Shown piece by piece: positions 34,472-58,088 of a stretch of 58,088 nt of DNA. The stretch comes from Klebsormidium nitens. Lineage: Eukaryota > Plantae > Klebsormidiophyceae. The notes beneath the pieces are model-generated. The model did no database searches and had not been told where the DNA came from. It worked only from the letters and a program-made list of their open reading frames with translations. The DNA lies in the NCBI GenBank assembly GCA_000708835.1, contig DF237519.1, forward strand, positions 1 through 58,088, in the 5' to 3' direction. Position 1 is the stretch's first letter; each line of letters starts with the position of its first letter. A program made the position numbers and the translations under genes.

Positions 34472-37400
34472 ATGTATTCTTCTCAGCATCGAGGGTCCCC
34501 AGAGCGTGGTAAGCCACTAGCCAGCACTAGGGTTTTCTTCTTTCAAGAGTTTCCAAGCACTGATTCGTTTCAGGATCCAGCTTCTGCTGAGTTTCTAAGG
34601 AGACCTTGCAAAGGGTTCACCTGGAGATCTCTAGGCGCCAGATTCCATTGCAGCACATGCTAAAACATTGATGGAACTGAGATGGAAACTTAAATCTCGA
34701 AACTCCAGTCTGAGGAGGGGTTCATACGGCCTGAAAAGGGCAACGCGATCTGACTTTGTGCATGCATCATAACCTTCAGTAAACTGCCGACCTTCACGGA
34801 TTGGCTGCCTTTCGTTGGAAGAATCACAGCCAGCAACAAAGGCATTGACTCTAGCGAACAGGGGCGATTTAGATGTAGCGTGCCCATGGGATAGCATCCT
34901 TGCTTGGTGTGTCCTTCTCTTGCTCGTTGCTAATTCTAGCATCAGCAATAGAGCAGAGAATGTCTCATAACCGATCTGGTGTTTGTGTTGACAAAGTCAG
35001 CAATGCTGTACTGGCCTCCAATCACTGACGCGATCTTGAAACGTTCCCAAGGATGAGTGGCTCAAAAGCTGGGCTCAAGGTTATGAGTAGGCCGAATCAA
35101 TGGCCCCCTGTAGTCGCTTATTTCGATGGTCGAAGCAGCCTGATCTCTGCACCAGTTTGACCTTTTTGTCTCAGGCAAGGTGTCTTTCCAATCAATTGTG
35201 GTCGTGACTCTAATCCAACCATAGCTTACGGCTGCACCCCTGCTTATACAGTGCTCAAGCCGGAGATCAAGCGCCAGGTGGCAGGCTACGTATCCACGGC
35301 GCCCATCTCTCCTACCGGGGGGCACCATCATTATGACTACGCATCCCCCCCCGGCTCTGCTGCCCAGAAGCTGGGCCACGTGGCTGAGCGCTTCTCCTCG
35401 TTTTACAACGACTTGGAGAGCGAGAAGCAGCACAGGTGAGAAAGAGACTCTTCAGCGCTTTCCTTTGGTTTCATCCGGTTGTCCCAGCGTTGAGGGTCAG
35501 GGAAAACGTACCCGCAGATGTTCAAAGCACATACTGCTTGCTTATGCAGTCGGACGCCTTACATTATGGGCCAAAGACATGGACGGCCCAGCAACCAGAA
35601 CTACTACGTTGCGCTTGTCAACAAAGCTGTGAGGAGTTGAAGTCTCATCTAGTCGAGAAAGACAGACGCCCTGCGGCGGGCATTGCCTAGTGTCTGAAAG
35701 GGAGAGAAGAACGATGAAGAGGACCTGTTCGTGCAAAGGCTCAGGAGAGGAAGTTGCACCGCTTTCCCGTTTCTCAAGAGACGATACTGAAAGAAAACCG
35801 GGTCGTCCCGACCTGCTCCGGAGCGCCGTCTTCTTGAAGAAGCAAATTTTTGGCAGTTCCAGAAGACACCATTTCCCTTCAGTGTCGTCTTTCGGCGCTT
35901 CAATTGTGACTACTTGAAGTCCGAACGACTGCAGGAATGAGACGGTTGCTCAGTTCCTGCAGTTCTATGAAGTAACAGCAGCCGGAGCGCAAGCGCAATT
36001 TGAGCTGGCTTCGGCATCGGCTTCACCAGCGTTTTTGCCAGCAATACAGAAAGATGTAACACATTTTTGGGCTACCCTTTCGACCTTCGCTTAATATCAG
36101 TTGCAGGCAAGCGGGACGGTCACCGGTGCGCAGCGCTGACGGATGCGGTGCAAAAGGTGGGGCGGAGTCTGGGAGGGGGCGTAATCCTTACACTCCGTTT
36201 GCAACCCCATTTGAACGTCGCACACCTTTAGCTTTATCTATTACCAGAGGACGTTCAGCTTGCAGACGCAAGACTTATGCCCAATGGCGTGCGGCAAAGG
36301 GGACTTCATGGCGAAGCTAAATCGCCAAACGGTTTGAAACAAAGCCTACCAATAAACCTACTAACATGTCAAGAAAAAGTAACCTATCTCAACTCACAAG
36401 ACCGTTCTTTTTCGCAGACGTGAGACCGACGCCCAGCGGCGCGCGGCGCTGACGGAGGCGGTGCAGAAGCTGGAGCGCGGTTTGGAAGCGATAATCGGCC
36501 TCGTTGAACCTTTCGCGAAACACATTCCAACAAGCAAATCTCCCTCTCATCTTCTAGAAGCTAATTACATACTTTTCCGCAGGCGCGAAACTGACGCCCA
36601 GCGACGCGCGGCCCTGACGGAGGCGGTCCAGAAGCTGGAGCGCAGTTTGGACGCGGAGATCAAGCGGCGCGCGGAGGCGGACAAGGGCCTCCAAGCGAGC
36701 CTCGAGGCGGAGATCAAGGCCGTGCACGAGAAGCTGGCGGGGCAAATTCGCGAACAAAACCTGCAGCTCAAGGTGGGGTCAGCGTTCGATTTCGGAACTA
36801 CAACCTGACCACTTCTTTTCACTCGGTCGAAACCATGGTGCAAGAGAAGCGGCGGGCGGGGCAGCTCCGCGAGCAGAACCTGCAGCTTAGATCGAGTTCC
36901 ACGCTTGTCTTCGATATTTGTTTGTTTGTTTGATTTTTCTTCTTCCGCTCTTTTTCGGTTTCGAAAAGACCCATGGCTCTCGAGTTCTTCCCGTGGGAAG
37001 TTGTCTGATTTCATCCTTGTAAGAGGACTGTTGGTCTTTTTCTGTGAAATAATCTCTGACTCAAACCTGGTGCAAGAAGGAAGCTGGTGGGCAGATCCGC
37101 AAACAGATCCGCGAACAAAAGGCAACGCCAGTCTACAATAATACATCTGGGTTGATGTTCTTTTTGCTATCTCGTTCTTTTGCTATCTCGTTTGAGGACT
37201 TGATGCGGGAAAGGAGCCTGCAACTGAAGATAGATAAGATGTCCGTCTTGGATCTGACTTTTTCAATACTGCATCCACTCAGTCTGCTAAACCCTCCGAA
37301 CCCTTGCGCGGGGGAGTATCCACACACTGCACGAGGAGCTGCACGAGGAGAAAGAGCAGCGGCGCACGAAGCTGAATTCTTATTTGGAACCTTGAAGCTG

Positions 37401-38764
37401 AACTCCTATCGCTAAATCCTTAAACCCTCGCGCAGGCGAGCATCGACGCGCTCAGCCGCACGTTCGCGGAGCTGCACGGGCAGCTGCGCGAGGAGAAGGA
37501 GCAGCGGCGCGTCGACTTGGAGCACCTGACGCAGACGATTGGCGCTAAAGTGGAGGAGGCGCACTCGGGGCTGGACGATGAGCGCGTCGCGCGGCTCGAG
37601 CGCGAGGCGCAAACCCTGAAGCGCGTCGGCGAAGACGTCTTCCGCGTGCAGGTAAACCCTAAACCCCTGAGGTTTCAGACCGCAGGGTTTGTGTGATGCG
37701 TGTTGAGCCGCAAACGCGAAAAGCATTGCGCGGCTCGAGCGGGAGGCCCAAACCCTGAATTCCGTCAGCGAGGTGGTCCTCCGCGTGCAGGTAAGGTTGC
37801 TGCGGAAAAACAGCCAGATTCACTCTAATGGAAAGTTGCGAAGTGAGCGTCAAACGGGAAGTGCGCGGCGCAAAAGCTGATTTCTTAGCCCTGGAAATGT
37901 TTGGACGGCAGAAAATCTTACCGAAGCGTATTCGAAAAGCTCATGGGGCGGCTCGAGTATGAAGCGCGGTCGTACACCCGCGAATCAATAGCAGCGGGTC
38001 GAAGGTCACGCAGCCTTCATATTCAGCAGACACTTTTAGAATGGAAGCAAGCCATGAGGAATCCTTTGGACTTGTGAAGAATGAAAGATGTTTGAACTTA
38101 TGAAAAATGAAAGATCTTCAAGATGCAAGAGACGGCGAGAGACTCTGAGCGATGAAGGAAGGAAGGTAGTTTGGGACTTGCGGTAAACTCCTCCAAGCCT
38201 TACGCGGCGATACGTGCGTTTGCAGGAGAAGATCGACGCTGAGCGCGCGACGCGCGAGGCCGCTCTGGAGATGATGCAACGCGAGGTGCGCGACTCGATG
38301 TCCGCGCACAACGAGAGCGAGGAGAGCTTTCAGCACATGGTAAGGAGGCGGAATCCACGAAGTCGCGAGTTGAACCTTGGGTCACCGAGTTTTGTTCTTG
38401 ACGTACATGATGCGCTCTGCCACCAAAAAGCAAGGAACCTTCTCTTGTTCATTTTTTTGGATTTGAGCGGCGGTGAGTCTTCGTTCGTTTCAAGTCTCCA
38501 ATTAGGTTACTTCTTTTGGTGTCACAGACGATCCGACCACAACTGGAGCTGCTTTTATTGCCTGAAAATTGAAGTCTGGATAAAGACAACGAGCTAAAAT
38601 CTAATCTTCTCGTGTTGATCCAGGTTTTGGACGACATCGCAACCCTGAAGAATCAAATGCTCGTCGAGAGGGAGGAGCGCATGTCGGAGGACGAGCAGAT
38701 TGTGCAGGCGATAAATGACTACACAAAGGCGCTCCAAGACGGCCTCAGGATAGTCAACAACTAG
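34472..38764 (+). CDS. SF-assemblin / beta-giardin family striated-fibre coiled-coil protein, 6 exons, ~293 aa
   Basis: join(34472..34508,35252..35435,36583..36772,37436..37651,38226..38339,38624..38764) = 882 nt with consistent phases. It has a Pro/Ser-rich head, then KLGHVAERFSSFYNDLESEK, LDAEIKRRAEADK, and the C-terminal EREERMSEDEQIVQAINDYTKALQDGLRIVN characteristic of SF-assemblin. Confidence 0.9.
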
Positions 38765-40028: not shown

Positions 40029-42254
40029 CTAATTCCAGGTGTTATCGCCCCCGCCCTCTGCGTAACCCCCGGTGTCTCCGGCAGAGAAACCGTCGCCGCC
40101 GCTGGAGAAGTCAGCGCCTCCACCCCAAGCGTCCGCAGCAGCAGGAGTGGCGTCGAGTCCTCCGCCCCAAACGTCCGTCGCAGCATGAGGGGCGTCAAAG
40201 CCCCCGAATTCCTCGTCCGCAGGCGCGGGTGGGTCATATGCAGGCGCAGGAGGAGCGTCCGCAGCCGCTAGAGGGTCGTCCGCAGCGGCGGGAGGGGCAT
40301 CCGAAGGCGCGGGAGGGGCGTCCGCAGGCGCTGGAGGGTCGTCCGCAGGCGCTGGAGAGGCATCCGAAGGCGCGGGAGCGGCTTCCGCAGGAGCGGGAAT
40401 ATCGTCGGCAGGCTTGAGAGGAGCGTCCGCAGGCGCGAAAGGGGCGTCCTCAGGCGCGGGCAGGACGTCCGCAGGCGCGTCCGCAGGCGCTGGTGGGGCG
40501 TCCGTAGGAGCAGGGGGACAGTCCGCGGGCGCGATGTGGGCATCCGCGGGCGCAGGAGGAGCGTCCGCAGGCGCGGAAGGCGCGTCCGCGGCCGCGCCGA
40601 TGGGCAGGTCCTTGTATTCGCCTCCAGTCTGAAACGCGCCTTCGCTTCCATCCTCGAAGATCAGGCCCCCTCCGTTGCCAGCGGTGTTGTCGCATAAGTC
40701 TTCCGGATCGCCTCCGCTGGAGTGACTCGAGTGACTAGACTGGCGGGAGTGACTGGACTTGCTCGAGTGGCTGTGATGGCTGCCTTCGCCGAAACCGTGA
40801 CCGCCGTGTTTGGGGTGTGCTGTGACCATGTGAGCGACTTGGTGTAGGGGATCTGCAAGATGCAGAAAGTGTTCGTATGACTTTCTTGTTGCCGACAGAA
40901 GGGCGTTGAAGGTATGCGGTAGCGAGCGGGACAAGCTTGTTTTCCCGTCCAATAGACTCCGATGGAGTACATCAAAACATATTCGGTAGATACAAAATGT
41001 TCGCAAAGCGTACCCTTGGCTCTGCTGCAGTCAAAGTCTTCAGAGATTGATCAACAGAGCCTGCAGTGTTGCACTTGTTCAGGTAGGGCTGAATTCCACT
41101 ATTCGCAACCCGGTCCACCCCTAATGAAAGTCATCTGCTTTCATTAGAATGCAATCGAATATTCTTAAGGAACAGATGAATCCGAACCTGCGACTTTTGA
41201 GCATCTCTTTCAACCTGAACAAAGGTAGAAGGCAGGAAACCAAGGATTCATGTATACAAGCCAGATTGAGTTCCAAAGAGGAAATGCGATAGAGAGATGC
41301 CTACTCACCCCTTTTCTTCTTGCCGACATGTGGCTCTTTGTGGAGTCCAAGCTGCAAGAAGTGGAAACGGCGAGTTTCTTGGAAAAGTCAGGAAACATGT
41401 AGATAAGTCGACCGTGGCACACTTACGAAGCATGTGACTTCATCATCCGACAGATTTGGAAGTTCTCCGTGAACAAGCCTGGAATTCGCTTCTTGCGAAC
41501 TTCTTCAGATCAAGTTCTTGTGATTTTTTATGCGCCTTTTTTAAAAACCATGGCTTCGTCCTTCTTTGATCTCGGACAAAATCAAATAGCAGCCCTGTCA
41601 AGCGGTCTTTCGCAGTTCTACAAATACAAGGGCAGCGCCTTTGTTTACCTCAGAGGGCTTCACAGCCCCAGCGATGATACTCAATGGGATCGTCTTCTCT
41701 TGAGTGTTGCCCTCGATAGGTTGTTCTACAAATGGAGACGCTATCTTGGTTTGGCACTCTTCAATTCCATGATGTTGCGCATTCAAGGTGGCAGCCTGTT
41801 CGTCTTTGACGGTCCCCGCAGGATCCTGCTCCTTTCTTTTCTTTTCACCACCGAAGGCCTTCTGAAGGACGGCTTTCGCCTTGTACTGCAGGAAGATCAG
41901 CAGATTAGCGAGTCAATTCAGCAGTCTGTAAGAATCAAGGCTAATAAAGACAGTCTGCGCGAAACAAAAAGTGATAAGTTGAACAAAACAATGATACTTT
42001 ATCCCCTGATCCCCTTTAAACGGACTGGACGCGATTCTGAATCTGGACAGATCTGTATAGCTACGCTGGATTAGAAGAGCTTGCCGCTCTGCTAGGTCGT
42101 TACGCTGCATCTGGGGCCTTCACCCAAAACTTGACCCTTCGATTCCGCACAATCCATCGTTCATTGGGCTTGATCATTTTCTTACCTTGAACGAAGGTCT
42201 CGGATGATCAGCAGACTCCGACGTTTGAGGCGCTGCCCCACAGCAAGAACGCAT
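40029..42254 (-). CDS. Orphan low-complexity protein (~390 aa) with a His/Ser tract and Asp-Ala-Pro heptad repeats
   Basis: complement(join(40029..40852,41309..41351,41649..41885,42186..42254)) = 1173 nt with GT-AG introns and consistent phases. Likely non-coding upstream exons have an acceptor near 42466 and a donor near 42617. No family recognised. Confidence 0.65.
40250..40595 (-). repeat. Coding 21-nt tandem repeat (~16 units) encoding D[AD]PPAPA-type heptads
   Basis: The plus strand repeats variants of gcaggcgctggagggtcgtcc. Translation: DAPSAPA DAPPAPA DAHIAPA DCPPAPT DAPPAPA ... DDPPAPA DAPPAPS. Confidence 0.9.
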
Positions 42255-42876: not shown

Positions 42877-42958
42877 TGTTAGAAGTATTTGCGCACTGCC
42901 ACTCGGGCTACACTGGCGCCAGTGTGGCCCGAGTGGCAGTGCGCAAATACTTCTAACA
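42877..42958. mobile_element. 82-bp palindromic element, copy 1
   Basis: TGTTAGAAGTATTTGCGCACTGCCACTCGGGCTACACTGGC|GCCAGTGTGGCCCGAGTGGCAGTGCGCAAATACTTCTAACA: 41-bp arms with one mismatch, no loop, TG...CA ends. It directly abuts the Copia 5' LTR. Confidence 0.9.
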
Positions 42959-43240
42959 TGTTAGAATATTGCCAGTCTAGTTACTGAGACAGTAGCTAGG
43001 TCCAGTCAGTAGTCTTCGTACCGTACGATGATGCTAAGATTGACTACGACCGTCGATATGACAAGTAGAGGGAAACCGTGTAGGAGAAGATCTATGCCGT
43101 GACCCTGAGAATTTCATTCGTAGTGAATCCTCCTCCACGACAAGTCGCCTTCTCTCTTACGAGCGCTTCTCTGCACATGGTTTCATGGTGTCCATGCACG
43201 AGCCTGCAATAGATGCTTCTATAGACGCTGCAATCTAACA
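42959..43240 (+). mobile_element. Ty1/Copia 5' LTR (282 bp)
   Basis: Starts TGTTAGA and ends TCTAACA (7-bp terminal inverted repeats). It is followed immediately by a PBS and then the gag-pol ORF. No second copy was found in the window. Confidence 0.85.
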
Positions 43241-43253
43241 GGTTATGGGCCCA
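43241..43253 (+). promoter_or_regulatory. Primer-binding site GGTTATGGGCCCA (tRNA-iMet half-molecule type)
   Basis: Lies flush with the LTR 3' end. It matches the PBS type of Drosophila copia, which primes from the internal anticodon-stem region of initiator tRNA-Met (established knowledge). Confidence 0.8.
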
Positions 43254-43533
43254 CCATCACACGGATGGTGAAAGAAGCTCTTAGAAGGAAAGCTGTTAGA
43301 TGTCATTCTGATTGGTTTGGTTTGGGGCCGGTCACAGCAAGGCTCATTTTTGAGAGTGCTGTGGGAAAGGCTTGAGGGAAATTCCCAACCACCTTTCAGC
43401 TCTCCCTGGGGAGGGCGTGGCATAAATTTCCTTGAGCTTAGGAGAAGCAGCAGGTTCAGAATTCCTTCGAAGGGAGGCAGCACTTCAGTATCCGCGAAGA
43501 AAGCGGATAGAGTGAGCTCCAACAGGAAGGAAG

Positions 43534-46119
43534 ATGGACACCAATGAGAAGATTCACATTGAGAAGCTGAAGGGAGCAGAGAACTATCAGACCTGGAAGG
43601 TGCTGATAAAGCTTCTGCTGACTGAGAAGGGTCTCAAGAAGACGATCGATCCTGAGACCAGGTCAAGCGAGGAGTTGGCTGCAAGGACTGCAGCAGTGAA
43701 GGCAAAGGAAGAAGAAGATCAAGAGAAGGCTCTGGCAGCAATTGGTCTTCGAGTGTCTTCAGAATTCCTTGGGATCATCACAGATGCTGATGGATCTGCA
43801 AGAGCAGCCTGGGAACAATTCTCAAGGATGTTCCAGTCTGTGACAAATGCAAGAAAGATGATGCTCAGGGAGAAGCTGGCATCACTGAAAATGGAGAGTG
43901 GAGAATCAGCAGCGAAGTATGTTGCTAAAGCAAAGGACCTCAAAAGAGATTTGCTGCAAGCAGGTCTAGACGCTGGAGACGTAGATCTTGCTGCTGCATG
44001 TGGTTTGTCCAGGTCCTACAGGGAGATTAGGATGGCACTAGAGCTGCAAGAAAAAGCTATCTCCCTGGATGAAATGCTTCCTCTCCTCCTCCAGCATGAA
44101 GCCAGACTCGAACGTGATGAGGAAACAGATCATGGAGAGTCCTCCAGTTCAATGGCCTTCGCGAGCAAAGGCTTCAAGCAGCATGCGGGGAAGTCTCAGA
44201 GCAGAAGACCAGGTCCTAAGTGCTGGACGTGCGGAGAAGAAGGTCACAGATCCTCGGAGTGCTCTCAGAACAGAGACAAGGACGAGGAGTGCAGGAAGTG
44301 TGGACTGAAAGGCCACATCGCAAGGAACTGCAGAAAGAGAGATTCGGGCGAAGGAAAGAGTGGAGAAAACAGGGACAAAGGGACGAGGAGATCCATGGTG
44401 TTTGCCTGTCCTCCAGAAACAACTCTCTCAACACTCTGGATTCTGGACTCTGGAGCAAGTGCTCATCTCTGCTGTCAAAAGGAGATGTTCTCAGAGCTCA
44501 GGGAACTCAAAGGTGGCGAGGCAGAGGAGATCCAAGGGGTTGGAGATGCAGTCAGAGTGGAGGGCATTGGGAAGGTGCCTCTGATTTGCAAGACCGAAGA
44601 GGGAGAGATGACAGAGGTCATTCTCGAAGGAGTCAAGTTTGCTCCTCAGGCGCAGGTCAATTTGGCAGCACTTGGCAAGTTTCTCAGCAAGGGAGCAACT
44701 CTGCACAGCGAAGGAAGCGTGGTCAGCCTGAAAATGGAGGGAGAAAAGTTCCTAGAAGCGGAGAATCAAGATGGAGTGTCGGTCATCAGGACAGTTTCGC
44801 AGAAATCTCTGGCCTTTGCAATCACTCAAGCTGATGAGGGAAGACTGTGGCACAGGCGCTTTGGTCATGCGAGCTGCGAAATCCTGGCGAAAATGGCGCA
44901 AGATTCTCTCGTTGAAGGACTCCCCCCAGCAGCAGCCTTCCGAAGAGCCGGCGAAACCCTCTGTGAAGACTGCGTCCTCGGCAAGCAAACTCGGAAACCC
45001 TTCTTCCCCAGTAACCGTCAAAGTCAGAACCCCCTCGATCTAGTTCATACGGACCTCTGCGGTCCGATGCAAACGACGTCAGCCGGGGGCGCTCGCTACG
45101 TCGTCACTTTCATAGACGACTACAGCCGGTGTGGGACGGTGCAGCTGCTAAGAACCAAGGAGCAGGCGAAGCAAGCCCTGGAAGCTTACGTCAGCTGCGT
45201 GGAAAACCAACTGGGGAGAACGGTCAAGAAAATCCAGAGCGATAGGGGCGGAGAGTACTGGAACGGGGAAGTCAAGGCGTTCTGTGCGCGCAAGGGGATC
45301 ATCCATCAGAAGACCAATCCCTACTCGAGTCCGGAAAACGGGGTAGCGGAACGGTTGAATAGGACTCTGATGGATAAGGTGCGCGCGATGCTGTCTGAGA
45401 GCGGATTGATACAGAAGTGGTGGGGCGAAGCGGTTCTGACTGCGAGCTACGTCAGGAACCGGACGGCGACCAAGACGCACGGGAAGACCCTCCTGGAGCT
45501 CTTCTTCGGGCAGAAGCCAAGTGTGAAGGAGCTCCGCGTCTTCGGTTCCAAGGCCTACGTCCACACCCCCGCTCAGAAGCGAAAGAAACTCGATCCTGTC
45601 GCGAAAGCCGGCGTCTTCCTCGGGTACGAACCAGGAACCAAGGGGTACCGGATCCTGCTGACGTCAGATCAGAAGACCGTGCTGATCTCGCGTGACGTCA
45701 CGTTTGACGAAGCGGAACGGAAGGACCCCGAGGGAGCGGAAGCCTGGGAAGACCCTCCGCCTCTGCCGTCAGTCTCGTCTGAGCCCGTCGAGCCTGAGGG
45801 AGAGAATGAAGAGGCGGAAACGGAAACCCCAGAACCGGAGCCGGAGAACGGAACGGAAGAGGGGAGCGGAACGGGAGAAGAGAGAGCGGAACCGGAAGCG
45901 ACGGGAAAGAGGGAGAGAAGACCGAGTCAGCGCTACCCCTCGAACGACTGGGTAACGGCAAACCTCGCAAAGGAGACGGCGGAACCGGTGGAGCCGAAAA
46001 CCCTGGAGGAAGCGCTAAGCAGCCCGGAAGCCGCATTTTTGTTAGAAGTATTTGCGCACTGCCACTCGGGCCACACTGGCGCCAGTGTAGCCCGAGTGGC
46101 AGTGCGCAAATACTTCTAA
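43534..46119 (+). mobile_element. Ty1/Copia gag-protease-integrase ORF (861 aa), truncated before reverse transcriptase
   Basis: Contains Gag N-terminus KLKGAENYQTWK, two CCHC knuckles (CWTCGEEGHRSSEC, CRKCGLKGHIARNC), protease WILDSGAS, HHCC (LWHRRFGH...CEDC), DDE core (HTDLCGP, SDRGGEY, GVAERLNRTL) and a C-terminal GVFLGY..KGYRI motif. It ends at EPKTLEEALSSPEA, the usual pre-RT motif. The last ~26 codons and the stop come from palindrome copy 2. Confidence 0.95.
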
Positions 46120-46121
46120 CA
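46040..46121. mobile_element. 82-bp palindromic element, copy 2
   Basis: Exact reverse complement of copy 1 (the single arm mismatch is on the opposite side). Flanks ATTTT / CACCC show no target-site duplication. Confidence 0.9.
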
Positions 46122-46558
46122 CACCCAACACCCAAAGTTCTCCATTTCTTAAACATTTCGTTGAAATAGTAAAGCTATTGCGAGCGAAAGCGAACTCGAA
46201 ACTCACAACATGTCGCTCTCGAACATATCAATTCTTGACGTCTACGTCTAGATTGAGCTCGAAGAGAGCGACAAGATCAAAATTGAGTGAGCGAAGCGAG
46301 CTATAAAACGCTTCTGAGCAGCGAAATGTTTCATTCCAAAGAATCAAGAACCGCTAGCGCCTTCCCTCCGCCAAACAAGCCCTTCCAACTTAGCACGCTT
46401 TCAATCTCGCCCTCCCCCCCCCGCCCTCAGTATCATTGCTCGCTCGATTCGCCTAACTCAAACCCGAGCTCCCCAGATGTTGATTTTGCGTCGAAGAGCT
46501 GCACCCAACACCCAAACTTCTCCATTTCTTAAACATTTCGTTGAAATAGTAAAGCTAT
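46122..46558 (+). repeat. 57-bp direct repeat pair (46122-46178 and 46502-46558)
   Basis: CACCCAACACCCAAA[G/C]TTCTCCATTTCTTAAACATTTCGTTGAAATAGTAAAGCTAT twice, with one mismatch and a 380-bp period. The first copy begins at the base after palindrome copy 2. Confidence 0.85.
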
Positions 46559-49918: not shown

Positions 49919-51796
49919 CTTCAAGGAGAGACTGACACGATTCCTCTAGAGATCTCAGAACCAGACTACCGGACAAGATGAGGAAAGCTTTGGAATCCAA
50001 CCTCGAGAGCACAAGACTTCGTGAGAACTTTCTCCCTTGTCGTTTTGCAGTTATAAAAGCCTGGTGTCTTCTCGGCCGACGTCAGGACCAGGGTAGCCGC
50101 GATGCGTCTCGAACGGAGGCATCCAAGGGCTTTTCACGGTCCAGCCTTCCGAAAGTGACCCCATCCATGGGTCCTCAAGTCAAGGTTGATGAGACAAGCT
50201 TGGTGCGCTCTTTTGGTCAGACAAATATGGCAAAGAGTAACACAATTCCTTAGTGGCAAGCAAAGCAGGGGCAGGGTACGAGCAACTTCGTGGCAGTTCC
50301 ACAAAGGTACATGCCAATCTTCTCGGGACGAAATTCAGATCATCAGAAATTCAAGAGCCAAAACAAATATAAGGGAGGCGCAATACCGAGGTGATTGATG
50401 ACTGTAAAAGTGGCTTCGGGGACGGGAAACTTTGAGGCGGTCAATGAGCAAGAAGCTCTTGGTGTCGGCTCACTCACGGCCAATGTCCACAGGAGCTTGA
50501 CAAAGTGCGCAAGGAAGATAATCAAAGGCACGCAAGATGATATCCGGCGGAAAGTATGAGAAGCGAAGAATCATTGATGTGCAACAGTTCACAGAAACAG
50601 AGATGTGTCAGCCAACTGCGTGCAACGAGCTCGAAGATTGATCACCAGACCGGATAATGTCGGCGTCCGCGGGTCACCCGGTTCCTGTGAGCAATCGATC
50701 GCTCAATAGCTCCTATCTTCATAGCCTCTCTTAAAGCTTCTACCAAAAATGGACTTTTACATGGCCGTTTCAAAGCCGTCTTGCGCGCCCTGAGGAACTA
50801 ACTACGATACCTCGGATCAGTCGCACAGCCCAAGAGAATAGACAACTACAAAAGCAAACGCTGATCCAAGTTTTGTGGCTAGGCCCCGCGAAGCTGATGC
50901 AAAATAATAAATGTACGCCGCTTTGTAACATACACAAATCAGGAATATCCTCGCTGCAGCTCATTGGCTCATCCCCCAACGTCCAACAACTTCGACAAAG
51001 TCGATGGGGACGCCTTCCACATCGTTCAAAAGGATTGTGCGACCCTCAACCATGACGTCGGGGAGTAACGGCTCGCATTACACCAACTGAGCAAACAAGC
51101 TCATGCATAGCGCCTATCATGACAAAAGTGCGAGATACTACGCGAGTCCGGAAACCAAGAATTTGTAAGAGGCTTACATGCGCAAGCAGACGTTCGACAC
51201 AAATCGTACGAGACGCACTTCCTTCTGTCGTAAACGCAATTAGTGTTCGGGGCGTGCGAGTACAACTGATTGCAAGGCGAGTCCGTCTTAACGTCTGTGG
51301 AAACGCAGATGCCCCCGAAGCTAGCGCATGTCCAATTTTTCAAAGCCGACGCGATCGAGAAGCCAGTAAAGAAGCCGCACTGCGCAAAAGAAGGCGCTCG
51401 ACTGTACCTCTTTGAGTTGTACCGTATGCTTCCTTTCATGACGGAAGACAAGGTCAGACTAGCTGGTGACAGGAACAGTACGAGGGAAGAACTTATGCCA
51501 CCGCTTCAAAGTGGGGCAAGAGTCCCCAATGGGAGCGGCTCAGAGCGGCTAGAGAGGGGTGAGCTGATAATCCCAGCCTGCAAGTTTTCATAGCCACTGG
51601 TAGCGGGGAATGGTGCGTTTGGCAGGACCAGAAAGAGCAGACTCGTGTCATCGGCACGGGCACGTGTCCGTAATACAGAAAGAGACTGCGAAAAAGCTGG
51701 ACAAGGGTTTTGAGCATCGGAACGGGACGCTGTCATTCTTTTGCAAAACATTGCCCCATGGTTCCGGGCGGGCAACGTCTTTGTTCACAGGGACAG

Positions 51797-52781
51797 TGTT
51801 AGAAGTATTTGCGCACTGCCACTCGGGTCACACTGGCGCCAGTGTAGCCCGAGTGGCNNNNNNNNNNNNNNNNNNNNNNNNNNNNNNNNNNNNNNNNNNN
51901 NNNNNNNNNNNNNNNNNNNNNNNNNNNNNNNNNNNNNNNNNNNNNNNNNNNNNNNNNNNNNNNNNNNNNNNNNNNNNNNNNNNNNNNNNNNNNNNNNNNN
52001 NNNNNNNNNNNNNNNNNNNNNNNNNNNNNNNNNNNNNNNNNNNNNNNNNNNNNNNNNNNNNNNNNNNNNNNNNNNNNNNNNNNNNNNNNNNNNNNNNNNN
52101 NNNNNNNNNNNNNNNNNNNNNNNNNNNNNNNNNNNNNNNNNNNNNNNNNNNNNNNNNNNNNNNNNNNNNNNNNNNNNNNNNNNNNNNNNNNNNNNNNNNN
52201 NNNNNNNNNNNNNNNNNNNNNNNNNNNNNNNNNNNNNNNNNNNNNNNNNNNNNNNNNNNNNNNNNNNNNNNNNNNNNNNNNNNNNNNNNNNNNNNNNNNN
52301 NNNNNNNNNNNNNNNNNNNNNNNNNNNNNNNNNNNNNNNNNNNNNNNNNNNNNNNNNNNNNNNNNNNNNNNNNNNNNNNNNNNNNNNNNNNNNNNNNNNN
52401 NNNNNNNNNNNNNNNNNNNNNNNNNNNNNNNNNNNNNNNNNNNNNNNNNNNNNNNNNNNNNNNNNNNNNNNNNNNNNNNNNNNNNNNNNNNNNNNNNNNN
52501 NNNNNNNNNNNNNNNNNNNNNNNNNNNNNNNNNNNNNNNNNNNNNNNNNNNNNNNNNNNNNNNNNNNNNNNNNNNNNNNNNNNNNNNNNNNNNNNNNNNN
52601 NNNNNNNNNNNNNNNNNNNNNNNNNNNNNNNNNNNNNNNNNNNNNNNNNNNNNNNNNNNNNNNNNNNNNNNNNNNNNNNNNNNNNNNNNNNNNNNNNNNN
52701 NNNNNNNNNNNNNNNNNNNNNNNNNNNNNGCCACACTGGCGCAAGTGTGGCCCGAGTGGCAATGCGCAAATACTTCTAACA
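51797..52781. mobile_element. Insertion bounded by palindrome copies 3 and 4 with a 5-bp TSD (GACAG); interior unsequenced
   Basis: GACAG (51792-51796) | TGTTAGAAGTATTTGCG...N872...TGCGCAAATACTTCTAACA | GACAG (52782-52786). The two partial copies differ at three positions where they overlap, so they are distinct copies. Confidence 0.85.
51858..52729. other. Assembly gap (872 N)
   Basis: Run of N. All ORFs crossing it are artefacts. Confidence 1.
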
Positions 52782-54827
52782 GACAGTTGGAAAAAGCTGT
52801 CCGACGCCTTGGTTGAGGGGTCGGACGTATGATCGTTCAACCAGCCAGTCATTCAAAGCCTTCTGACGAAAAGTTCGGAAAAATGAGAGGTTAGCTACCC
52901 AAAATCGGCTTTTCGGCTTCGTTGGATGGAGGGCTTCGCTTCTCTTTGTGTGCGTAGAACGCACTGGCAACTTTTAACAAGACGCTGCCCTCTTTCTGGT
53001 TTATGAAGAAGAGGAGTGTATCACAAACCAAAGGAGCCATCCTGATTCACGAAACCGATACGAAACGAGCCATCTTCACTGTTTATTTTCTTTCTTCCAA
53101 GACGTAGCTTCAGGGCGACCTGTTCGAAAACCATGTGAGCTTCAAATGCTCAGGTGCTCTCTATCATAGCCAGGTATACACAACTTCTAAGCAACTTCGC
53201 TTCTGAGACCGTCATAAAGGTCCAGCCGCATCAGGTCAGCCCTGCCCAGACCGTGAGCTCGACATCACGACCAGGATATGTGCACTCAAACGAGGCCAAG
53301 CATGCCAAGCATGAAGCCTACCTAGCTGAGAGCCGTCAAGGTCCTTGCTCGGTTGTGAGCTTTTGAACCTGATCAATCAGGGTTCTGATCGGACAAACGT
53401 ATGCGGCATCTGAGACAAGCCAAACCACGCAAAGAACTGAGCACCAAGGCTCGCGCCCAAGTTCGTCACAGGCGCACACAAGTCCGGCCAGGCGGTGTCC
53501 GCGCAACCCGATAGCGGTGTGAGCAATAACATGGACACATATCACCGCAACCGTACCATTCAGTATTCTTGAAAAGCCTCCCCTGGCTAGCTTGACCAGA
53601 CTGCTCAAGGACTAGAATCAAGTAACCTTCTACCTAACCTGTTCAAGAAGTTTCGTACAACGACCATTGACTTCCACTGCTGTCAGCGGTTCTGAGAGCT
53701 TCAAGGAACACGGGCGAAGCAGCTGGGCGAAATTCTAATGCACATCAACAAGAGACCAGAACATTGCCTTACAAGCGGCTCAGAAGACAGTGACAGTTCA
53801 CCGTGTGAGCTCCTCAAGCTCACCGGACTTATCACAGCCATTATAATTGAATCGCTCTCACAGGTCTACTCTTGAGAGGTTGATGGAGTTTCAGTCCGAA
53901 ATGCTCTCACGTCGAGCGAGGCAGGAAACGTTTTCACCAAAGAAATGAATTGGATTTGGAGACTACTTAGATTAGGCTGCGAGACACATGACGTTGGGTC
54001 GGAAACAAAAAGGTGGCTCCCGGATGCCATCATAAGCTAAGGCAAGTGCAAAACACTGATGATTACATGACACGCCACATGAAAAATTCTGAAGCTCTTC
54101 TGATGGGCAAGAAAATCAGAAATCACAAGCTGCCACAAGGTCCCTTCCGCCCAGAACTCGAAGTACGTGGCAGAATCGTGAAGTCTGATATCTACCGAGA
54201 AACGCCAGTAGTTTTGATTCGTCGTAGCCACCACTCGAGTGATCCGGGAGGTGCGAGTAAGCAGATGAAAGATGATGCCCTGCTAGTTCCTGAAGCGAAA
54301 TCTTGTCACAAGGAAGCGTAACGTCAAGGCGAACACACCTGAGCAATCAGATTCCACATTCTCAAGAGCTTGCAAATGGCACACTCCAGGCTGCAGCGAC
54401 GTATAACTTGAGCAGACCCTTGAAAGGTACACCAACTGGTACTCCCACCCAAGCCAGCAGAATACTCCATATCTATGCTGGATCGAGGCAGATCGGACAC
54501 TTTCCTTTCCAGAGGCACTATAAGTGCTACCTCAACTTGAAAGCAGTTTGAAGAAGCGGTCAAGCAAAAGCTGGCAGACTCCTCGGTCTCAGAAGTCGGG
54601 CGTGACACGGAAACTAGCTCGAATGATAGGGTGACAAGCACCTGCTTCGGCAGATCAAGAATGGCATACACACTTGCATGCATGATGAAAAGTGCCCAAT
54701 GACAGAAAGAACATTCGATCGAACATTCGTGAAAGTTGTGATGCTGTTTAGACCATCTCTTTGAATGGTTGGGTCCGCCCAACTGAGTGTTCCCAATAGA
54801 CTGTCAAATGACGAATCGCGACTGGAA

Positions 54828-57194
54828 TCAAGACGGTGGGAGATATCCAGGCGCTTTTGTCCTTCTTAACTTCTCAACGTCTATGACTCCGATGAACACC
54901 GCACAAGCTGCCCCTACGCACACCAGCGCAGCTACTAGAGTCCGTTGCCGCAAACCCATCTCGTTCCGGTGCAACCTGCAGAGACAAGAAGAACGACCTA
55001 GAGCTTGTCGTTTATCTGGATACTAAACATCAACCGAGCGGAGTCACGCAGTCAACTGGAGAACCATCGAAAGACGACACTGCTCCGAACGGGGTCAAAT
55101 GCAGATAAGGGCTGTCGCCTGAATTGTAAGACGAGTTATGGAGCCCATGACATAGCCTGAAGTTTGATCCAGGTGATTAGACCCTGTCCGGATTGCAAGC
55201 GAAGTAAGCAGATCTGCAAGGAAGCCAAGATTGACGCATACTGAGGTAGGCTTGTGACCGTGCACGACTCATGCATATTTCTAGAATGCCCAGAAGCAGG
55301 CGTTCTTGGCCCGAAATGACCAGCAACTCAGCCTTATCTTAGGTATACCAGAACGACTGCGCTCGTTGCCGCAGCTTGCGCTATTGAAGTTGCAGGGAAC
55401 AGGGCAACACACATCCCTTGCACTAGGAAATGACGGGAAACAGAAAGGTGTCTACTCTTGGTACTAAAGTACAGCTGGCAGGGACTCTTTGCAAAACTTG
55501 ACCAGGAGAGACTTCATAAAGACCGGACTAGTATCACGTGTTATCGAGGAGCTTGGCAGCAGCAGTGAGAAGCAGAGATTCCAAATTCCCGACCCTGCCA
55601 AGTCTGACGAGAAGCGGACACGTGGCATCCACAAGGATTACATGACCCCTGGCAGCATTGGGGCAGAGCCCCGTGCTTGCGAGCTTCTGCCGGATCAGTG
55701 ATTTTTCAAGAGCGGCCACGTGGCACTCACGTAGTACCTAGAAAGACCTGCACTAGCAGCAAGGAAGATCCCCACGCTTGCAGCTGTTCCTCAATCTCAG
55801 ACAATCAAGTTGCAAAAGCTGACACGTGGCACTCACACGTAGTAGAAGACCCCTGGCAGCAGCAGGGAGGAGCACATGCTGGCGACGCCGCCGACGAGCG
55901 ACTCCACGTAGCCCAGCACGTCGTACGCCACCACGGACACCGCGTACGCCACGCCCAGGACCGGCGTCCGCAAACACCGCTCCACGATAGCTGCAAAAGC
56001 GGATCGAATGTCCATTTTATGAGGAAGGCACTATACTGAGCGCTTCTTCTTAGACTGGTTGGTTTGAAGTAGCCAAAAGCAGGGAAACCCATACGCTACC
56101 GCCAAATCAGCGTCCGCAAACTCCGCTCCACCACAGCTGCCACAGCGGACGGAACTTCTTCATCAGAGGAGGGCATATTCTGAGGGCTTGTTAGACGGGT
56201 TGGTCTGAAGTAGCAAGAAACATGGATCGCGTCTGCCACGCCCAGGACCAGCGTCCGCAAACACCGCTTCACCACAGTTGCGAAATATACAAAGGCGCCA
56301 CCTCCTCCCAAAGTGGTTTTGACATCCTCGGTTGTCGCGGGGGGAGTCCATGAGGCTGATAATCAATGACGTCGTGTCTCACCAGGAAAACATGGAGAAG
56401 ACAGAATTCGCCCAAAATCACCCGACTCGAGCGCTTTCGCTGGCATGTACGCCACGTCAGCGGTGAGCTCCTCGAAACGAAAATGAGCGATGAGAGCGTC
56501 AGGGCGTCAATGGTTCGCTCTGAAGTCGACTGAAGCGGACTGCAACAGTCTCACGCGGATTAACATATTGCAGTCTGATCGCGGGTCCGAGCTTCGATGT
56601 TTCTTGAGCCGCCAAATGCCGAACCTTTTCCGAACTGGAAGGGTCTCCAGGATGCCGCGAGAGACAAAAACAAAAGCGCTCCAGAAGACAAATATTGGAG
56701 GAAGCAGGCAAGCAAAGACAATGGAACGACGTACGATAAGAAACAACAGTCGACCGTACCTGACGCCCCCGCCTTTGTGGTCCCATGCGCCGTATTGATA
56801 TTGAATTTCCTCGAAAGCAAACACGAGGGGCAAACTCCTCAAGCAGGCGTGAAAACTTGTACAAAATGATGCAAACCCTCTTGAGTAGCATTGTAGAAAC
56901 ACCTCTAGGTAGAAACAAACGTTTGGAAGGTCTTTACCTGATGCGCGCGCTTTCGTGGTCCCTTGCGCCATGTCGATAATGAGCTCCGCGAGCACAAATA
57001 CGAGCGGCGAGATGGTGGAGAAGGAGCTCAGCGCAACTAGAGCGGAGAGCAGCTGCGAGAGGCTGATCTCGAACGCGCCCAACTTGAGGAGCTTCCATCC
57101 GGCGACGGAGGAAGAAGTGGCCAGGTTGTGGGTGACGAGAACGGAGCAGCTCTCGCCGTAGTACTGGTAAGCGGCGGCGCCCATCAGAGCATAC
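54828..57194 (-). CDS. 3' part of an AVT1-like (Aa_trans family) amino-acid transporter; 5' exons lie beyond the window
   Basis: complement(join(54828..54975,55837..55990,56938..57194)) with consistent phases: YALMGAAAYQYYGESCSVLVTHNL...SFSTISPLVFVLAELI / AIVERCLRTPVLGVAYAVSVVAYDVLGYVESLVGGVASMCSSLLLPGVFYY / VLHRNEMGLRQRTLVAALVCVGAACAVFIGVIDV...PPS*. The 5'-most exon has AC rather than AG at the expected acceptor. Confidence 0.8.
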
Positions 57195-58088
57195 GTGCCA
57201 GAAAGGGTAAGACGCTGCTCAGAGAACATTTTCTGAAGTTCAGATTCAAGTGTGATATCATGCGACTGTGTTCAACATCTGGAAAGGTTTCAAGACCGCT
57301 CCGGATTGAGTCGCCAGATTGTGGGTGTCGAGGACGGAGCAGTTCTCGCCAAAACATTGGTAAGCAGCAGCACCCATCAGAGTGTATTTGCGAGAAAGGA
57401 CAAGATTCTGTTGCAGGCTATTTCTTGCTTCCGGGGTTCACATGAGCCTGCCAAGATAGAGGTTTATTTTTAACCCTTTATACGCTCCATAGGGCGATAG
57501 TAAAATACTGCCAGGTGGTAGTTAGTCGAGAACGGAGCAGCTGTCGCCAAAGTACTGGTAGGCAGCGTCACCCATCAGAGCGTATCTGCAAGGAAAAGCG
57601 ATGTTCTGCGTATTAAAACCTTGCTTGCATTTTGAACCTTGCCGATGTGTCAAAATACGATTGTTAAAAGCAAGGGTTTGGGTTCAAGGTTTTTCTTCCA
57701 CGCCCGATGTTTCAATAGTTGCCGATGTTTCAATAGTTGCCAGACAATCAGTGACGTCATCGGAGCGGCACTTGCTAGAGTACTGTCATGCGGCAGCTGG
57801 CATCCGAGCGTACCGTCAACAAATCAAAATTCTATCTTGACTTCTGAATAAAGTTCAGGAACCTGAAGCTAGAGCCTGAGCTTTAAGAAGCTTCAAGCTG
57901 GCGACGGAGGCTGACGTAGCAGAGTAGTTCGCGGCAGAATATAAAGGCACTTTGCCGGAGCTCAACCAAACCATGTATGCGGGACGTGCAGAGGAGTGGC
58001 CTTGGTTTCAAAGTTCGTATCGTTCTACCAAGTGCCAAGACGACTCTCATATCTCGCTGAAAGGGCCTCAACGGAGCTCAGAATGGAT

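What the first reader, a model, noticed from the sequence alone, without database searches (positions are those of the whole stretch)
42877..46121. RT-less Copia with intact Gag-PR-IN bracketed by two oppositely oriented palindromes
The 861-codon ORF has no stop or frameshift and keeps all integrase motifs. It is cut at EPKTLEEALSSPEA, just before RT, and palindrome copy 2 supplies the stop. There is no PPT or 3' LTR. The 3245-bp unit therefore starts TGTTAGAA and ends TTCTAACA, with att-like ends at both termini and an integrase inside. This resembles the step from LTR retrotransposon to integrase-only DNA transposon proposed for Ginger elements (inference). Caveat: the flanks CCATG / CACCC are not a TSD, so a deletion by recombination between palindrome copies is an equally good explanation.
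Basis: partly seen in the sequence, partly recalled or inferred. Interest (0 to 1): 0.75.

Follow-up and report, generated by a model that had tools for sequence, protein, structure and literature searches.

The report
Truncated Copia capped by mirror palindromes
A jumping gene of the alga Klebsormidium has lost its copying enzyme and one end repeat and is instead closed off at both ends by mirror-image copies of an 82-letter palindrome whose tips imitate the jumping gene's own ends; a second, diverged copy of the same joint exists elsewhere, so this may be a new way of hitch-hiking on the element's pasting enzyme, but that is not yet proven.

Summary
Window 42877-46121 holds an 82-bp near-perfect palindrome (pal1), a complete 282-bp Copia 5' LTR, a half-tRNA-Met primer binding site and an intact 861-codon Gag-protease-integrase ORF. 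A second palindrome (pal2), the exact reverse complement of pal1, supplies the stop codon. Copia homology ends at SSPEA, where relatives start reverse transcriptase. The window holds no RT, PPT or 3' LTR.

New evidence:
- The palindrome tips equal the first 8 nt of the LTR.
- A second palindrome-bounded site (51797-52781, spanning an assembly gap) has a clean 5-bp duplication, GACAG.
- A 46-aa ORF from an independent ENA contig (P0025) carries a diverged palindrome plus the same ~19-nt Copia/filler joint, but unrelated sequence upstream. The joint is therefore not unique. One arm-to-arm compensatory change keeps the symmetry.

Best reading (0.45): a Copia-derived, palindrome-ended unit inserted as a whole by Copia-type integrase. 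Rivals: a dead-end rearrangement (0.3), an autonomous integrase-only DNA transposon (0.12), an assembly artefact (0.05).

Unit 1 has no 5-bp TSD. The scan noted this stretch before (s1-332500) and other odd Copia copies in this genome.

The parts
42877..42958 (.). pal1: 82-bp palindrome with no loop. Its tips are TGTTAGAA / TTCTAACA. The left arm has T and the right arm C at arm position 33.
42951..42966 (.). Exact abutment of the pal1 end and the LTR start. It forms a 16-nt perfect palindrome, TTCTAACA|TGTTAGAA, like a 2-LTR circle junction.
42959..43240 (+). Copia 5' LTR, 282 bp, running TGTTAGAAT...ATCTAACA. There is no second copy in the window.
43241..43256 (+). Primer binding site directly after the LTR. 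Its first 13 nt are the antisense of the initiator tRNA-Met anticodon arm, i.e. the half-tRNA-Met type of the Osser/Bryco lineages.
43534..46032 (+). Copia-derived part of the ORF, aa 1-833. Domains: Gag 43609-44121, zinc knuckles 44221-44316, protease 44437-44694, integrase zinc/pre-integrase 44794-44988, integrase core 45031-45330, SH3-like 45505-45720, acidic linker up to SSPEA.
46033..46039 (+). 7-nt joint, GCATTTT, between Copia and pal2. It encodes AF plus the first base of L. P0025 also has AF at this joint.
46040..46121 (.). pal2: the exact reverse complement of pal1. It encodes the 26-aa tail and the stop codon (46117-46119).
46122..46178 (+). 57-nt direct repeat R1, starting at the first base after pal2. 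Its twin R2 lies at 46502-46558 (98% identical). It marks a rearrangement whose edge coincides with the palindrome edge.
51792..52786 (.). Second palindrome-bounded site: GACAG, pal3 (51797-51857 visible), 872 N, pal4 (52730-52781 visible), GACAG.

Best explanation
The stretch is a 3'-truncated Ty1/copia element of the green-algal half-tRNA-Met (Osser/hemivirus-like) kind. The 5' LTR, the PBS and an intact Gag-protease-integrase ORF are kept. RT, RNase H, PPT and the 3' LTR are gone.

It is bracketed by two mirror-image copies of an 82-bp palindrome whose outer 8 nt copy the LTR's integrase-recognition tip. The most likely reading is that this is one member of a small family of palindrome-ended, Copia-derived units. 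Each unit is pasted into the genome as a whole by a Copia-type integrase, either its own or that of full-length relatives. The integrase would act on the palindrome tips as if they were LTR ends.

Shown:
- the anatomy
- the tip mimicry
- a second palindrome-bounded insertion with a 5-bp duplication
- a second, diverged copy of the same Copia/palindrome joint in another context
- retention of palindrome symmetry by a paired change

Inferred:
- that integrase does the pasting
- that the unit is the thing copied

Unknown: how a new copy is made. The unit has no 3' LTR or PPT, so ordinary reverse transcription cannot regenerate it. A DNA route is the simplest guess, for example a circle or linear molecule with abutted or free palindrome ends.
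For: 1. pal1 and pal2 are 100% identical as inverted repeats, including their single asymmetric position. Both outer arms carry T33 and both inner arms carry C33.
2. The palindrome tip TGTTAGAA equals the LTR start, and the LTR ends TCTAACA.
3. The site at 51797-52781 has palindrome sequence at both edges and GACAG on both sides. The chance of a 5-bp match is 0.0011 in this window.
4. P0025, a 46-aa ORF on a 5324-bp ENA contig, shares 86% of the palindrome-encoded tail and also the 6 residues before it (SPGAAF versus SPEAAF). The next 14 residues upstream match nothing in the window in any frame. The joint is therefore older than this copy and sits in at least two contexts.
5. Relative to the window, P0025 has H>R and V>A at mirrored palindrome positions 19 and 64, a compensatory pair.
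6. This copy looks young. Its terminal palindromes are identical and the ORF is intact. Private substitutions at otherwise invariant columns are 2.8%, against 1.4-3.1% in full-length relatives.
7. The T33/C33 asymmetry is shared by pal1, pal2 and pal3. The palindrome is therefore inherited as a whole unit, not re-made by fold-back each time.
Against: - Unit 1 has no 5-bp TSD (CCATG versus CACCC).
- The only TSD-like pattern is CCCA around an 84-nt inverted repeat. The extra CA on the right also belongs to the host repeat R (R2 has it without a palindrome), which weakens that reading.
- Only one other copy of the joint is known, and its DNA context could not be fetched.
- The second site spans an 872-N gap. 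It could be a single 82-bp palindrome broken by the assembler.
- Gag, protease, LTR and PBS are retained although the model does not need them.
- No Copia integrase is known to mobilise chromosomal DNA.
Confidence: 0.45

Rival explanations
1. Dead-end rearrangement. The 82-bp palindrome is a small mobile or fragile sequence in its own right. A Copia copy or a partial Copia cDNA became trapped between two palindrome copies. This could have happened by end-joining at a palindrome-induced break, or by deletion or recombination between palindrome copies. The resulting unit is not itself mobile.
For: - There is no 5-bp TSD around unit 1.
- The left joint is a blunt end-to-end abutment of a CA end and a TG end, like an end-joined circle junction.
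- The right joint carries 7 nt of filler.
- A 57-nt duplication starts exactly at the outer edge of pal2. This suggests breakage and repair at the palindrome base.
- Capture of Ty1 cDNA at chromosome breaks and breakage at long palindromes are both established in yeast (my knowledge: Moore and Haber 1996; Teng et al. 1996; Lobachev et al. 2002).
Against: - The same Copia/filler/palindrome joint recurs in a diverged copy with a different upstream partner. A one-off event does not predict this.
- The terminal palindromes are identical although the joint is old.
- The second palindrome-bounded site has one shared TSD rather than one per palindrome.
Confidence: 0.3
2. One reading: an autonomous, integrase-only DNA transposon born from Copia. 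Its own integrase would cut or copy the chromosomal element at the palindromic ends and re-insert it, as a Copia counterpart of Ginger.
For: - The 82-bp terminal inverted repeats fall in the Ginger range, and the termini fit TGTNR.
- The integrase is intact, with all catalytic residues.
- The joint is not unique.
- A palindrome-bounded site has a 5-bp TSD.
- The integrase half of the ORF has normal CpG content while the gag-protease half is CpG-depleted, which would fit a different history or constraint.
Against: - No excision footprint or empty site was seen.
- Gag, protease, a complete LTR and the PBS are still present and unaltered.
- The nearest relatives are the same along the whole ORF, so the integrase half does not look like a separately evolving lineage.
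- Unit 1 has no clean TSD.
- No integrase-only ORF family was found in the protein databases.
Confidence: 0.12
3. Assembly artefact. The 2014 Newbler assembly of 454 and Illumina reads mis-joined Copia and host sequence through a short repeat or a library-derived palindrome.
For: - Palindromes lie at every odd joint and at both edges of an assembly gap.
- The assembly is short-read based.
- Copia is a multi-copy family.
Against: - The palindrome occurs in a diverged form, with a compensatory pair, in an independent ENA assembly. It is therefore natural sequence, and the pol/palindrome joint is seen twice.
- Copies differ at several positions.
- Unit 1 lies in gap-free sequence, and 82 bp is shorter than a 454 read.
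Confidence: 0.05

Closest known systems
Ty1/copia LTR retrotransposons of the Osser / hemivirus type (half-tRNA-Met primed)
   Same: It shares the Gag-protease-integrase order and Pfam domains and has 53-88% amino-acid identity to K. nitens and related Copia polyproteins. The LTR has TG..CA ends. The PBS is complementary to the anticodon arm of initiator tRNA-Met.
   Different: It has no RT, RNase H, PPT or 3' LTR. Instead of direct LTRs at both ends it has an 82-bp palindrome at each end in mirror orientation. This copy has no 5-bp TSD.
Ginger1 / Ginger2-TDD DNA transposons (Bao, Kapitonov, Jurka 2010, PMC2836005)
   Same: It has an integrase-family enzyme inside, terminal inverted repeats in the 40-270 bp range and TGTNR-type termini. 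Ginger TSDs are short, 4-5 bp.
   Different: Ginger transposases are Gypsy-type, some with YPYY and GPY/F motifs, and have no Gag or protease. Here the integrase is Copia-type and still fused to Gag and protease, with a complete LTR and PBS inside. Multi-copy mobility is not shown.
Non-autonomous LTR elements (TRIM, LARD, TR-GAG)
   Same: It is a coding-deficient derivative that would depend on enzymes of an autonomous partner and shares that partner's terminal nucleotides.
   Different: Those elements keep two direct LTRs, a PBS next to the 5' LTR and a PPT next to the 3' LTR, and they replicate through RNA. Here the terminal repeats are inverted palindromes, and neither a PBS nor a PPT abuts them.
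IS3/IS481-type copy-out-paste-in elements and retroviral 2-LTR circle junctions
   Same: The enzyme is of the DDE integrase fold, the termini are TG..CA and the TSDs are short. The palindrome/LTR abutment (CA|TG, a 16-nt perfect palindrome) looks like an abutted-ends junction.
   Different: No circle was observed. This is an analogy only.
Retrotransposon cDNA captured at chromosome breaks (yeast Ty1) and breakage at long palindromes
   Same: The Copia fragment is truncated, starts at a natural cDNA end, has filler at the other joint and lacks a TSD. A repair-like duplication lies at the palindrome edge.
   Different: Such captures are unique events. Here the joint recurs in a second, diverged copy.

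Membership tests
Ty1/copia LTR retrotransposon (complete) | Polyprotein with Gag, protease and integrase, followed by RT and RNase H | tested here: not met
   Gag, protease and integrase are present. RT and RNase H are absent from the ORF and from the whole window.
Ty1/copia LTR retrotransposon (complete) | Two direct LTRs | tested here: not met
   Only the 5' LTR (42959-43240) is present. No second copy turns up with word-7 blastn.
Ty1/copia LTR retrotransposon (complete) | PBS directly after the 5' LTR | tested here: met
   The PBS lies at 43241-43256. Its first 13 nt equal the antisense of the tRNAMet(i) anticodon arm printed in PMC1797187. Half-tRNA-Met PBSs are typical of Osser/Bryco.
Ty1/copia LTR retrotransposon (complete) | PPT before the 3' LTR and a 5-bp TSD | tested here: not met
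   There is no purine tract before pal2. The flanks are CCATG and CACCC.
Ginger DNA transposons | Terminal inverted repeats of about 40-270 bp with TGTNR termini | tested here: met
   The inverted repeats are 82 bp and 100% identical. The termini are TGTTA...TAACA.
Ginger DNA transposons | 4-bp TSD (5 bp in TDD-4/5) | tested here: inconclusive
   CCCA flanks the element only if it is extended by TG/CA. The CA also belongs to host repeat R. The neighbouring site has a clean 5-bp GACAG.
Ginger DNA transposons | Gypsy-type integrase/transposase with no Gag, protease or RT | tested here: not met
   The integrase is Copia-type: gag_pre-integrs, rve and SH3_retrovirus domains, and its best relatives are Copia polyproteins. 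It is fused to Gag and protease.
Ginger DNA transposons | Multiple copies with the same ends at different loci | tested here: inconclusive
   One further diverged copy of the right-hand joint was found (P0025).
TRIM / LARD / TR-GAG non-autonomous LTR elements | Direct terminal repeats with an adjacent PBS and PPT | tested here: not met
   As direct repeats the two palindromes differ at 2 positions, and as inverted repeats at none. The sequence after pal1 is the LTR start, and the sequence before pal2 is coding sequence plus filler.
MITE / foldback element (the palindrome alone) | Each copy flanked by its own TSD | tested here: not met
   pal1 has CCATG / TGTTA and pal2 has ATTTT / CACCC. Only the outer flanks of the pal3...pal4 pair match.

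The most novel reading that the evidence does not exclude
A Copia-derived element has switched from RNA-based to DNA-based propagation. Its integrase would recognise palindromic, hairpin-capable ends that mimic LTR tips and would move or copy the unit through a DNA intermediate, either a circle with abutted palindromes or a hairpin-ended linear molecule. Short internally deleted derivatives such as the P0025 copy, and perhaps the 1-kb site at 51797-52781, would ride on it. This would be the first Copia counterpart of Ginger and a living intermediate between LTR retrotransposons and integrase DNA transposons.
Probability: 0.13. Interest if true: 0.85.

Novelty: new variant of a known kind. Interest (0 to 1): 0.55.

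Why it matters
LTR retrotransposons and integrase-type DNA transposons (Ginger, IS3/IS481) are thought to share ancestry. No intermediate is known on the Copia side. An RT-less Copia derivative that has intact integrase, ends mimicking LTR tips and signs of propagating as a unit would make that transition testable in a culturable alga close to land plants. If integrase only supplies the pasting step in trans, palindrome-ended units would still be a new type of parasite of Copia. The 82-bp palindrome would then be a useful minimal substrate for studying which ends a Copia integrase accepts. If it is a dead-end rearrangement, it is still a clean example of a palindrome acting as a breakpoint in a small algal genome.

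Tried and rejected
1. Other genomic copies:
- Scans for a 20-nt palindrome-arm pattern in metagenome contigs and genome contigs gave only chance 20-mers with no palindrome.
- Viral contigs gave nothing, by protein or by a degenerate arm pattern.

2. Is the palindrome-encoded tail diverged RT sequence? No. Local alignment against the RT N-termini of four relatives is not better than shuffles (p 0.09-0.44).

3. Is the palindrome arm homologous to the LTR beyond its tip? This was not demonstrable. After fixing the first 8 nt, 223 of 2000 shuffles score as well.

4. Is the left flank a paralogue of the right region, giving an empty site? No similarity was found.

5. Do proteins carry the C-terminal 100 aa? 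None were found. A search with P0025 found only itself.

6. Does the N-terminus of P0025 match the window in any of six frames? Only chance-level matches appeared.

7. Rfam gave only sub-threshold miRNA-hairpin look-alikes on the palindromes. There are no tRNA genes in the window. The bacterial promoter/terminator scan was empty and is not relevant here.

8. Is the palindrome a library adaptor? This is rejected. It does not match the 454 linkers I know (memory), its copies differ from one another, and a diverged copy exists in an independent assembly.

9. Could cruciform breakage of one ancestral palindrome have produced both copies? By my working, symmetric processing of the two hairpin ends would give direct copies, not the mirrored copies observed. 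It is kept only as part of the dead-end rival.

10. dN/dS could not be computed because no DNA of relatives was available. A protein-level proxy was used instead.
Full report
**Source and context**

Earlier notes of this scan name the genome as Klebsormidium nitens. In agreement, the closest proteins to the ORF are K. nitens Copia polyproteins. The rest of the window looks like ordinary intron-containing host genes. Nine other long ORFs gave no transposon domains.

**Observation**

The ORF 43534..46119 is open for 861 codons. Pfam finds, in order:
- Copia-type Gag
- two CCHC knuckles
- the Pol beta-barrel (protease)
- the GAG-pre-integrase zinc domain
- the rve core
- the SH3-like integrase C-terminal domain

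No RVT_2 or RNase H is found. The protease DSG, the integrase H440/H445/C477/C480 and D507/D570/E606 are all in place.

I aligned the ORF with full-length relatives P0002 (1199 aa), P0003 (1318 aa), P0005 and P0006. The ORF is collinear up to ...EALSSPEA (aa 833, nt 46032). The relatives continue ELW... into about 470 residues of RT and RNase H. The window instead reads 28 residues that are encoded by 7 nt of filler plus the palindrome. This tail is not diverged RT. tblastn finds no RT anywhere in the window.

The two palindromes lie at 42877-42958 and 46040-46121. Each is 82 nt with a single arm mismatch, and copy 2 is the exact reverse complement of copy 1. They fold as loop-free hairpins of -49 and -48 kcal/mol (z about -15.5).

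**The 5' side is a normal Copia end**

Directly after pal1 the sequence starts TGTTAGAAT. It ends ATCTAACA 282 nt later, at 43240. The next 16 nt (43241-43256) begin with 13 nt that equal the antisense of the anticodon arm of initiator tRNA-Met, as printed in PMC1797187. Half-tRNA-Met primer binding sites are the mark of the Osser, Bryco and some Gymco-II Copia lineages (PMC6317226).

So the LTR boundaries are firm, and pal1 abuts the first base of the LTR exactly. Together they form a 16-nt perfect palindrome, TTCTAACA|TGTTAGAA. That is what an end-to-end (circle-type) junction of two integrase-ready ends looks like.

The palindrome shares its first 8 nt with the LTR, and 12 of 13 nt allowing one gap. 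Nothing beyond that is demonstrable.

**The palindrome is a repeat family, and pairs of it bound something**

A third and a fourth copy lie at 51797-51857 and 52730-52781, on the two sides of an 872-N gap. In the part visible from both sides they differ at 3 of 31 positions, so they look like two palindromes rather than one. Contig ends built from reads of other copies cannot be excluded.

The outer flanks are GACAG on both sides. A 5-bp match has a chance of 0.0011 in this window, and 5 bp is the usual Copia TSD length. By contrast, neither pal1 nor pal2 has a TSD of its own, and unit 1 as a whole has CCATG versus CACCC.

If the inverted repeat is taken as 84 nt (TG plus palindrome, and palindrome plus CA), the flanks are CCCA on both sides. 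However, the CA is also the start of a 57-nt host repeat. Its twin at 46502 has the CA without any palindrome next to it. I therefore do not count this as a TSD.

pal1, pal2 and pal3 each have one arm with T and one arm with C at arm position 33. This shared asymmetry means the palindrome is inherited as a whole 82-nt unit. It is not re-created by fold-back synthesis at each event.

**A second copy of the joint**

I therefore searched the 30 residues encoded across the joint and the palindrome against 1.84 billion representative proteins.

One real hit came back: P0025, a 46-aa ORF on a single 5324-bp ENA contig.
- Its last 26 residues are the palindrome-encoded tail at 86% identity, ending at the same stop.
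- The six residues before the tail read SPGAAF, against SPEAAF here. That is the last four Copia residues plus the two filler residues.
- The 14 residues further upstream match nothing in the window in any frame.

The Copia/filler/palindrome joint is thus identical by descent in two copies that differ upstream of about 19 nt. This is the pattern of an internally deleted derivative, not of a one-off scar and not of a simple orthologue.

Two of the four amino-acid differences, H to R and V to A, fall on mirrored palindrome positions 19 and 64 and are complementary. Symmetry has therefore been kept. By my rough estimate the chance of this is about 0.03.

The evidence is a single extra copy seen only as protein.

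**Age**

The joint is old enough to have diverged by at least 5% within the palindrome. In this copy, however, the two terminal palindromes are identical and the ORF is intact. The ORF shows no excess of private changes at otherwise invariant columns: 2.8%, against 1.4-3.1% in relatives. An old joint in a young copy argues that the unit has been copied.

**Mechanism**

Ordinary reverse transcription cannot regenerate this unit. It has no 3' LTR and no PPT. The complete U3 of the internal LTR would not be present in an LTR-driven transcript. Neither palindrome is followed by a PBS or preceded by a PPT, so the palindromes are not miniature LTRs.

What the anatomy does offer is two ends that a Copia integrase should accept. 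By my recollection (Devine and Boeke 1994, not checked here), Ty1 integrase needs only about 4 terminal base pairs in vitro. The neighbouring site also has the right TSD length.

I therefore favour insertion of palindrome-ended DNA as a unit by Copia integrase, with the way the DNA copy is produced left open (0.45).

The main rival is a dead-end rearrangement: a Copia copy or partial cDNA end-joined between palindromes at a break (0.3). It explains the missing TSD, the blunt CA|TG joint, the filler and the 57-nt duplication that begins exactly at the pal2 edge. It does not predict the second copy of the joint.

The strict integrase-only DNA transposon is possible (0.12), but no feature specifically supports autonomy. 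Gag, protease, LTR and PBS are untouched, and the same relatives are closest along the whole ORF.

An assembly artefact is unlikely (0.05). The palindrome and the joint recur in an independent assembly. The K. nitens assembly is 454 plus Illumina with Newbler, and 82 bp is shorter than a 454 read.

**Comparison with known systems**

The unit works most like a terminal-inverted-repeat element with an integrase inside, as Ginger does. But it fails Ginger membership on the enzyme, which is Copia-type and still fused to Gag and protease.

It is a Copia derivative by descent, but it fails three of the defining features of a complete Copia element. It is not a TRIM, LARD or TR-GAG element, because its terminal repeats are inverted and lack an adjacent PBS and PPT.

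I file it as a new variant of a known kind.

**Earlier notes of this scan**

These are leads, not tested here:
- the same stretch read as a minimal integrase-mobilised palindrome (s1-332500)
- a Copia with inverted end repeats and a clean 5-bp footprint (s1-310339)
- a 164-letter palindromic unit joining a Copia 3' end to a Copia gag (s1-353351)
- Gypsy elements with permuted LTRs suggesting circle integration (s1-344046, s1-351009)

They suggest that aberrant or circle-based integration is common in this genome. None was used as evidence.

**Limits**

The decisive test is to count both joints and their flanks in the whole genome.

Noticed in passing
window 43100-46099: There is a sharp compositional boundary inside the ORF at about 44900, where the integrase begins. 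CpG observed/expected is 0.26-0.61, with TpG and CpA excess, over the LTR end, gag and protease. It is about 1.0-1.1 over the integrase. GC3 rises from 0.36-0.58 to 0.70-0.78. The nearest protein relatives do not change across the boundary.
   Followed up: partly
window 46122-46178 and 46502-46558: A 57-nt direct repeat (98% identical) brackets 323 bp of unique sequence. The first copy starts at the very first base after pal2. Both copies begin with a tandem CACCCAA CACCCAA. It may be a repair scar of a break at the palindrome base. It remains unexplained.
   Followed up: partly
window 51858-52729: An 872-N assembly gap lies exactly between two partial palindromes that share one 5-bp TSD. Its content, one palindrome or an internal domain of about 0.9 kb, is unknown.
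   Followed up: partly
window 40150-40602: An array of a 21-nt tandem repeat (14 or more overlapping 126-nt registers) lies about 2.3 kb upstream of the element, inside long ORFs on both strands.
   Followed up: no
window 26400-27356, 36094-37794, 55612-57608: There are several families of 130-200-nt periodic direct repeats at 60-90% identity. They are probably repeated exons or domains of host genes.
   Followed up: no
P0025 (ENA contig of 5324 bp): The diverged palindrome copy carries T at arm position 33 (Y instead of H). This is the same variant that is polymorphic among the window's arms, so the T/C asymmetry may be old.
   Followed up: partly
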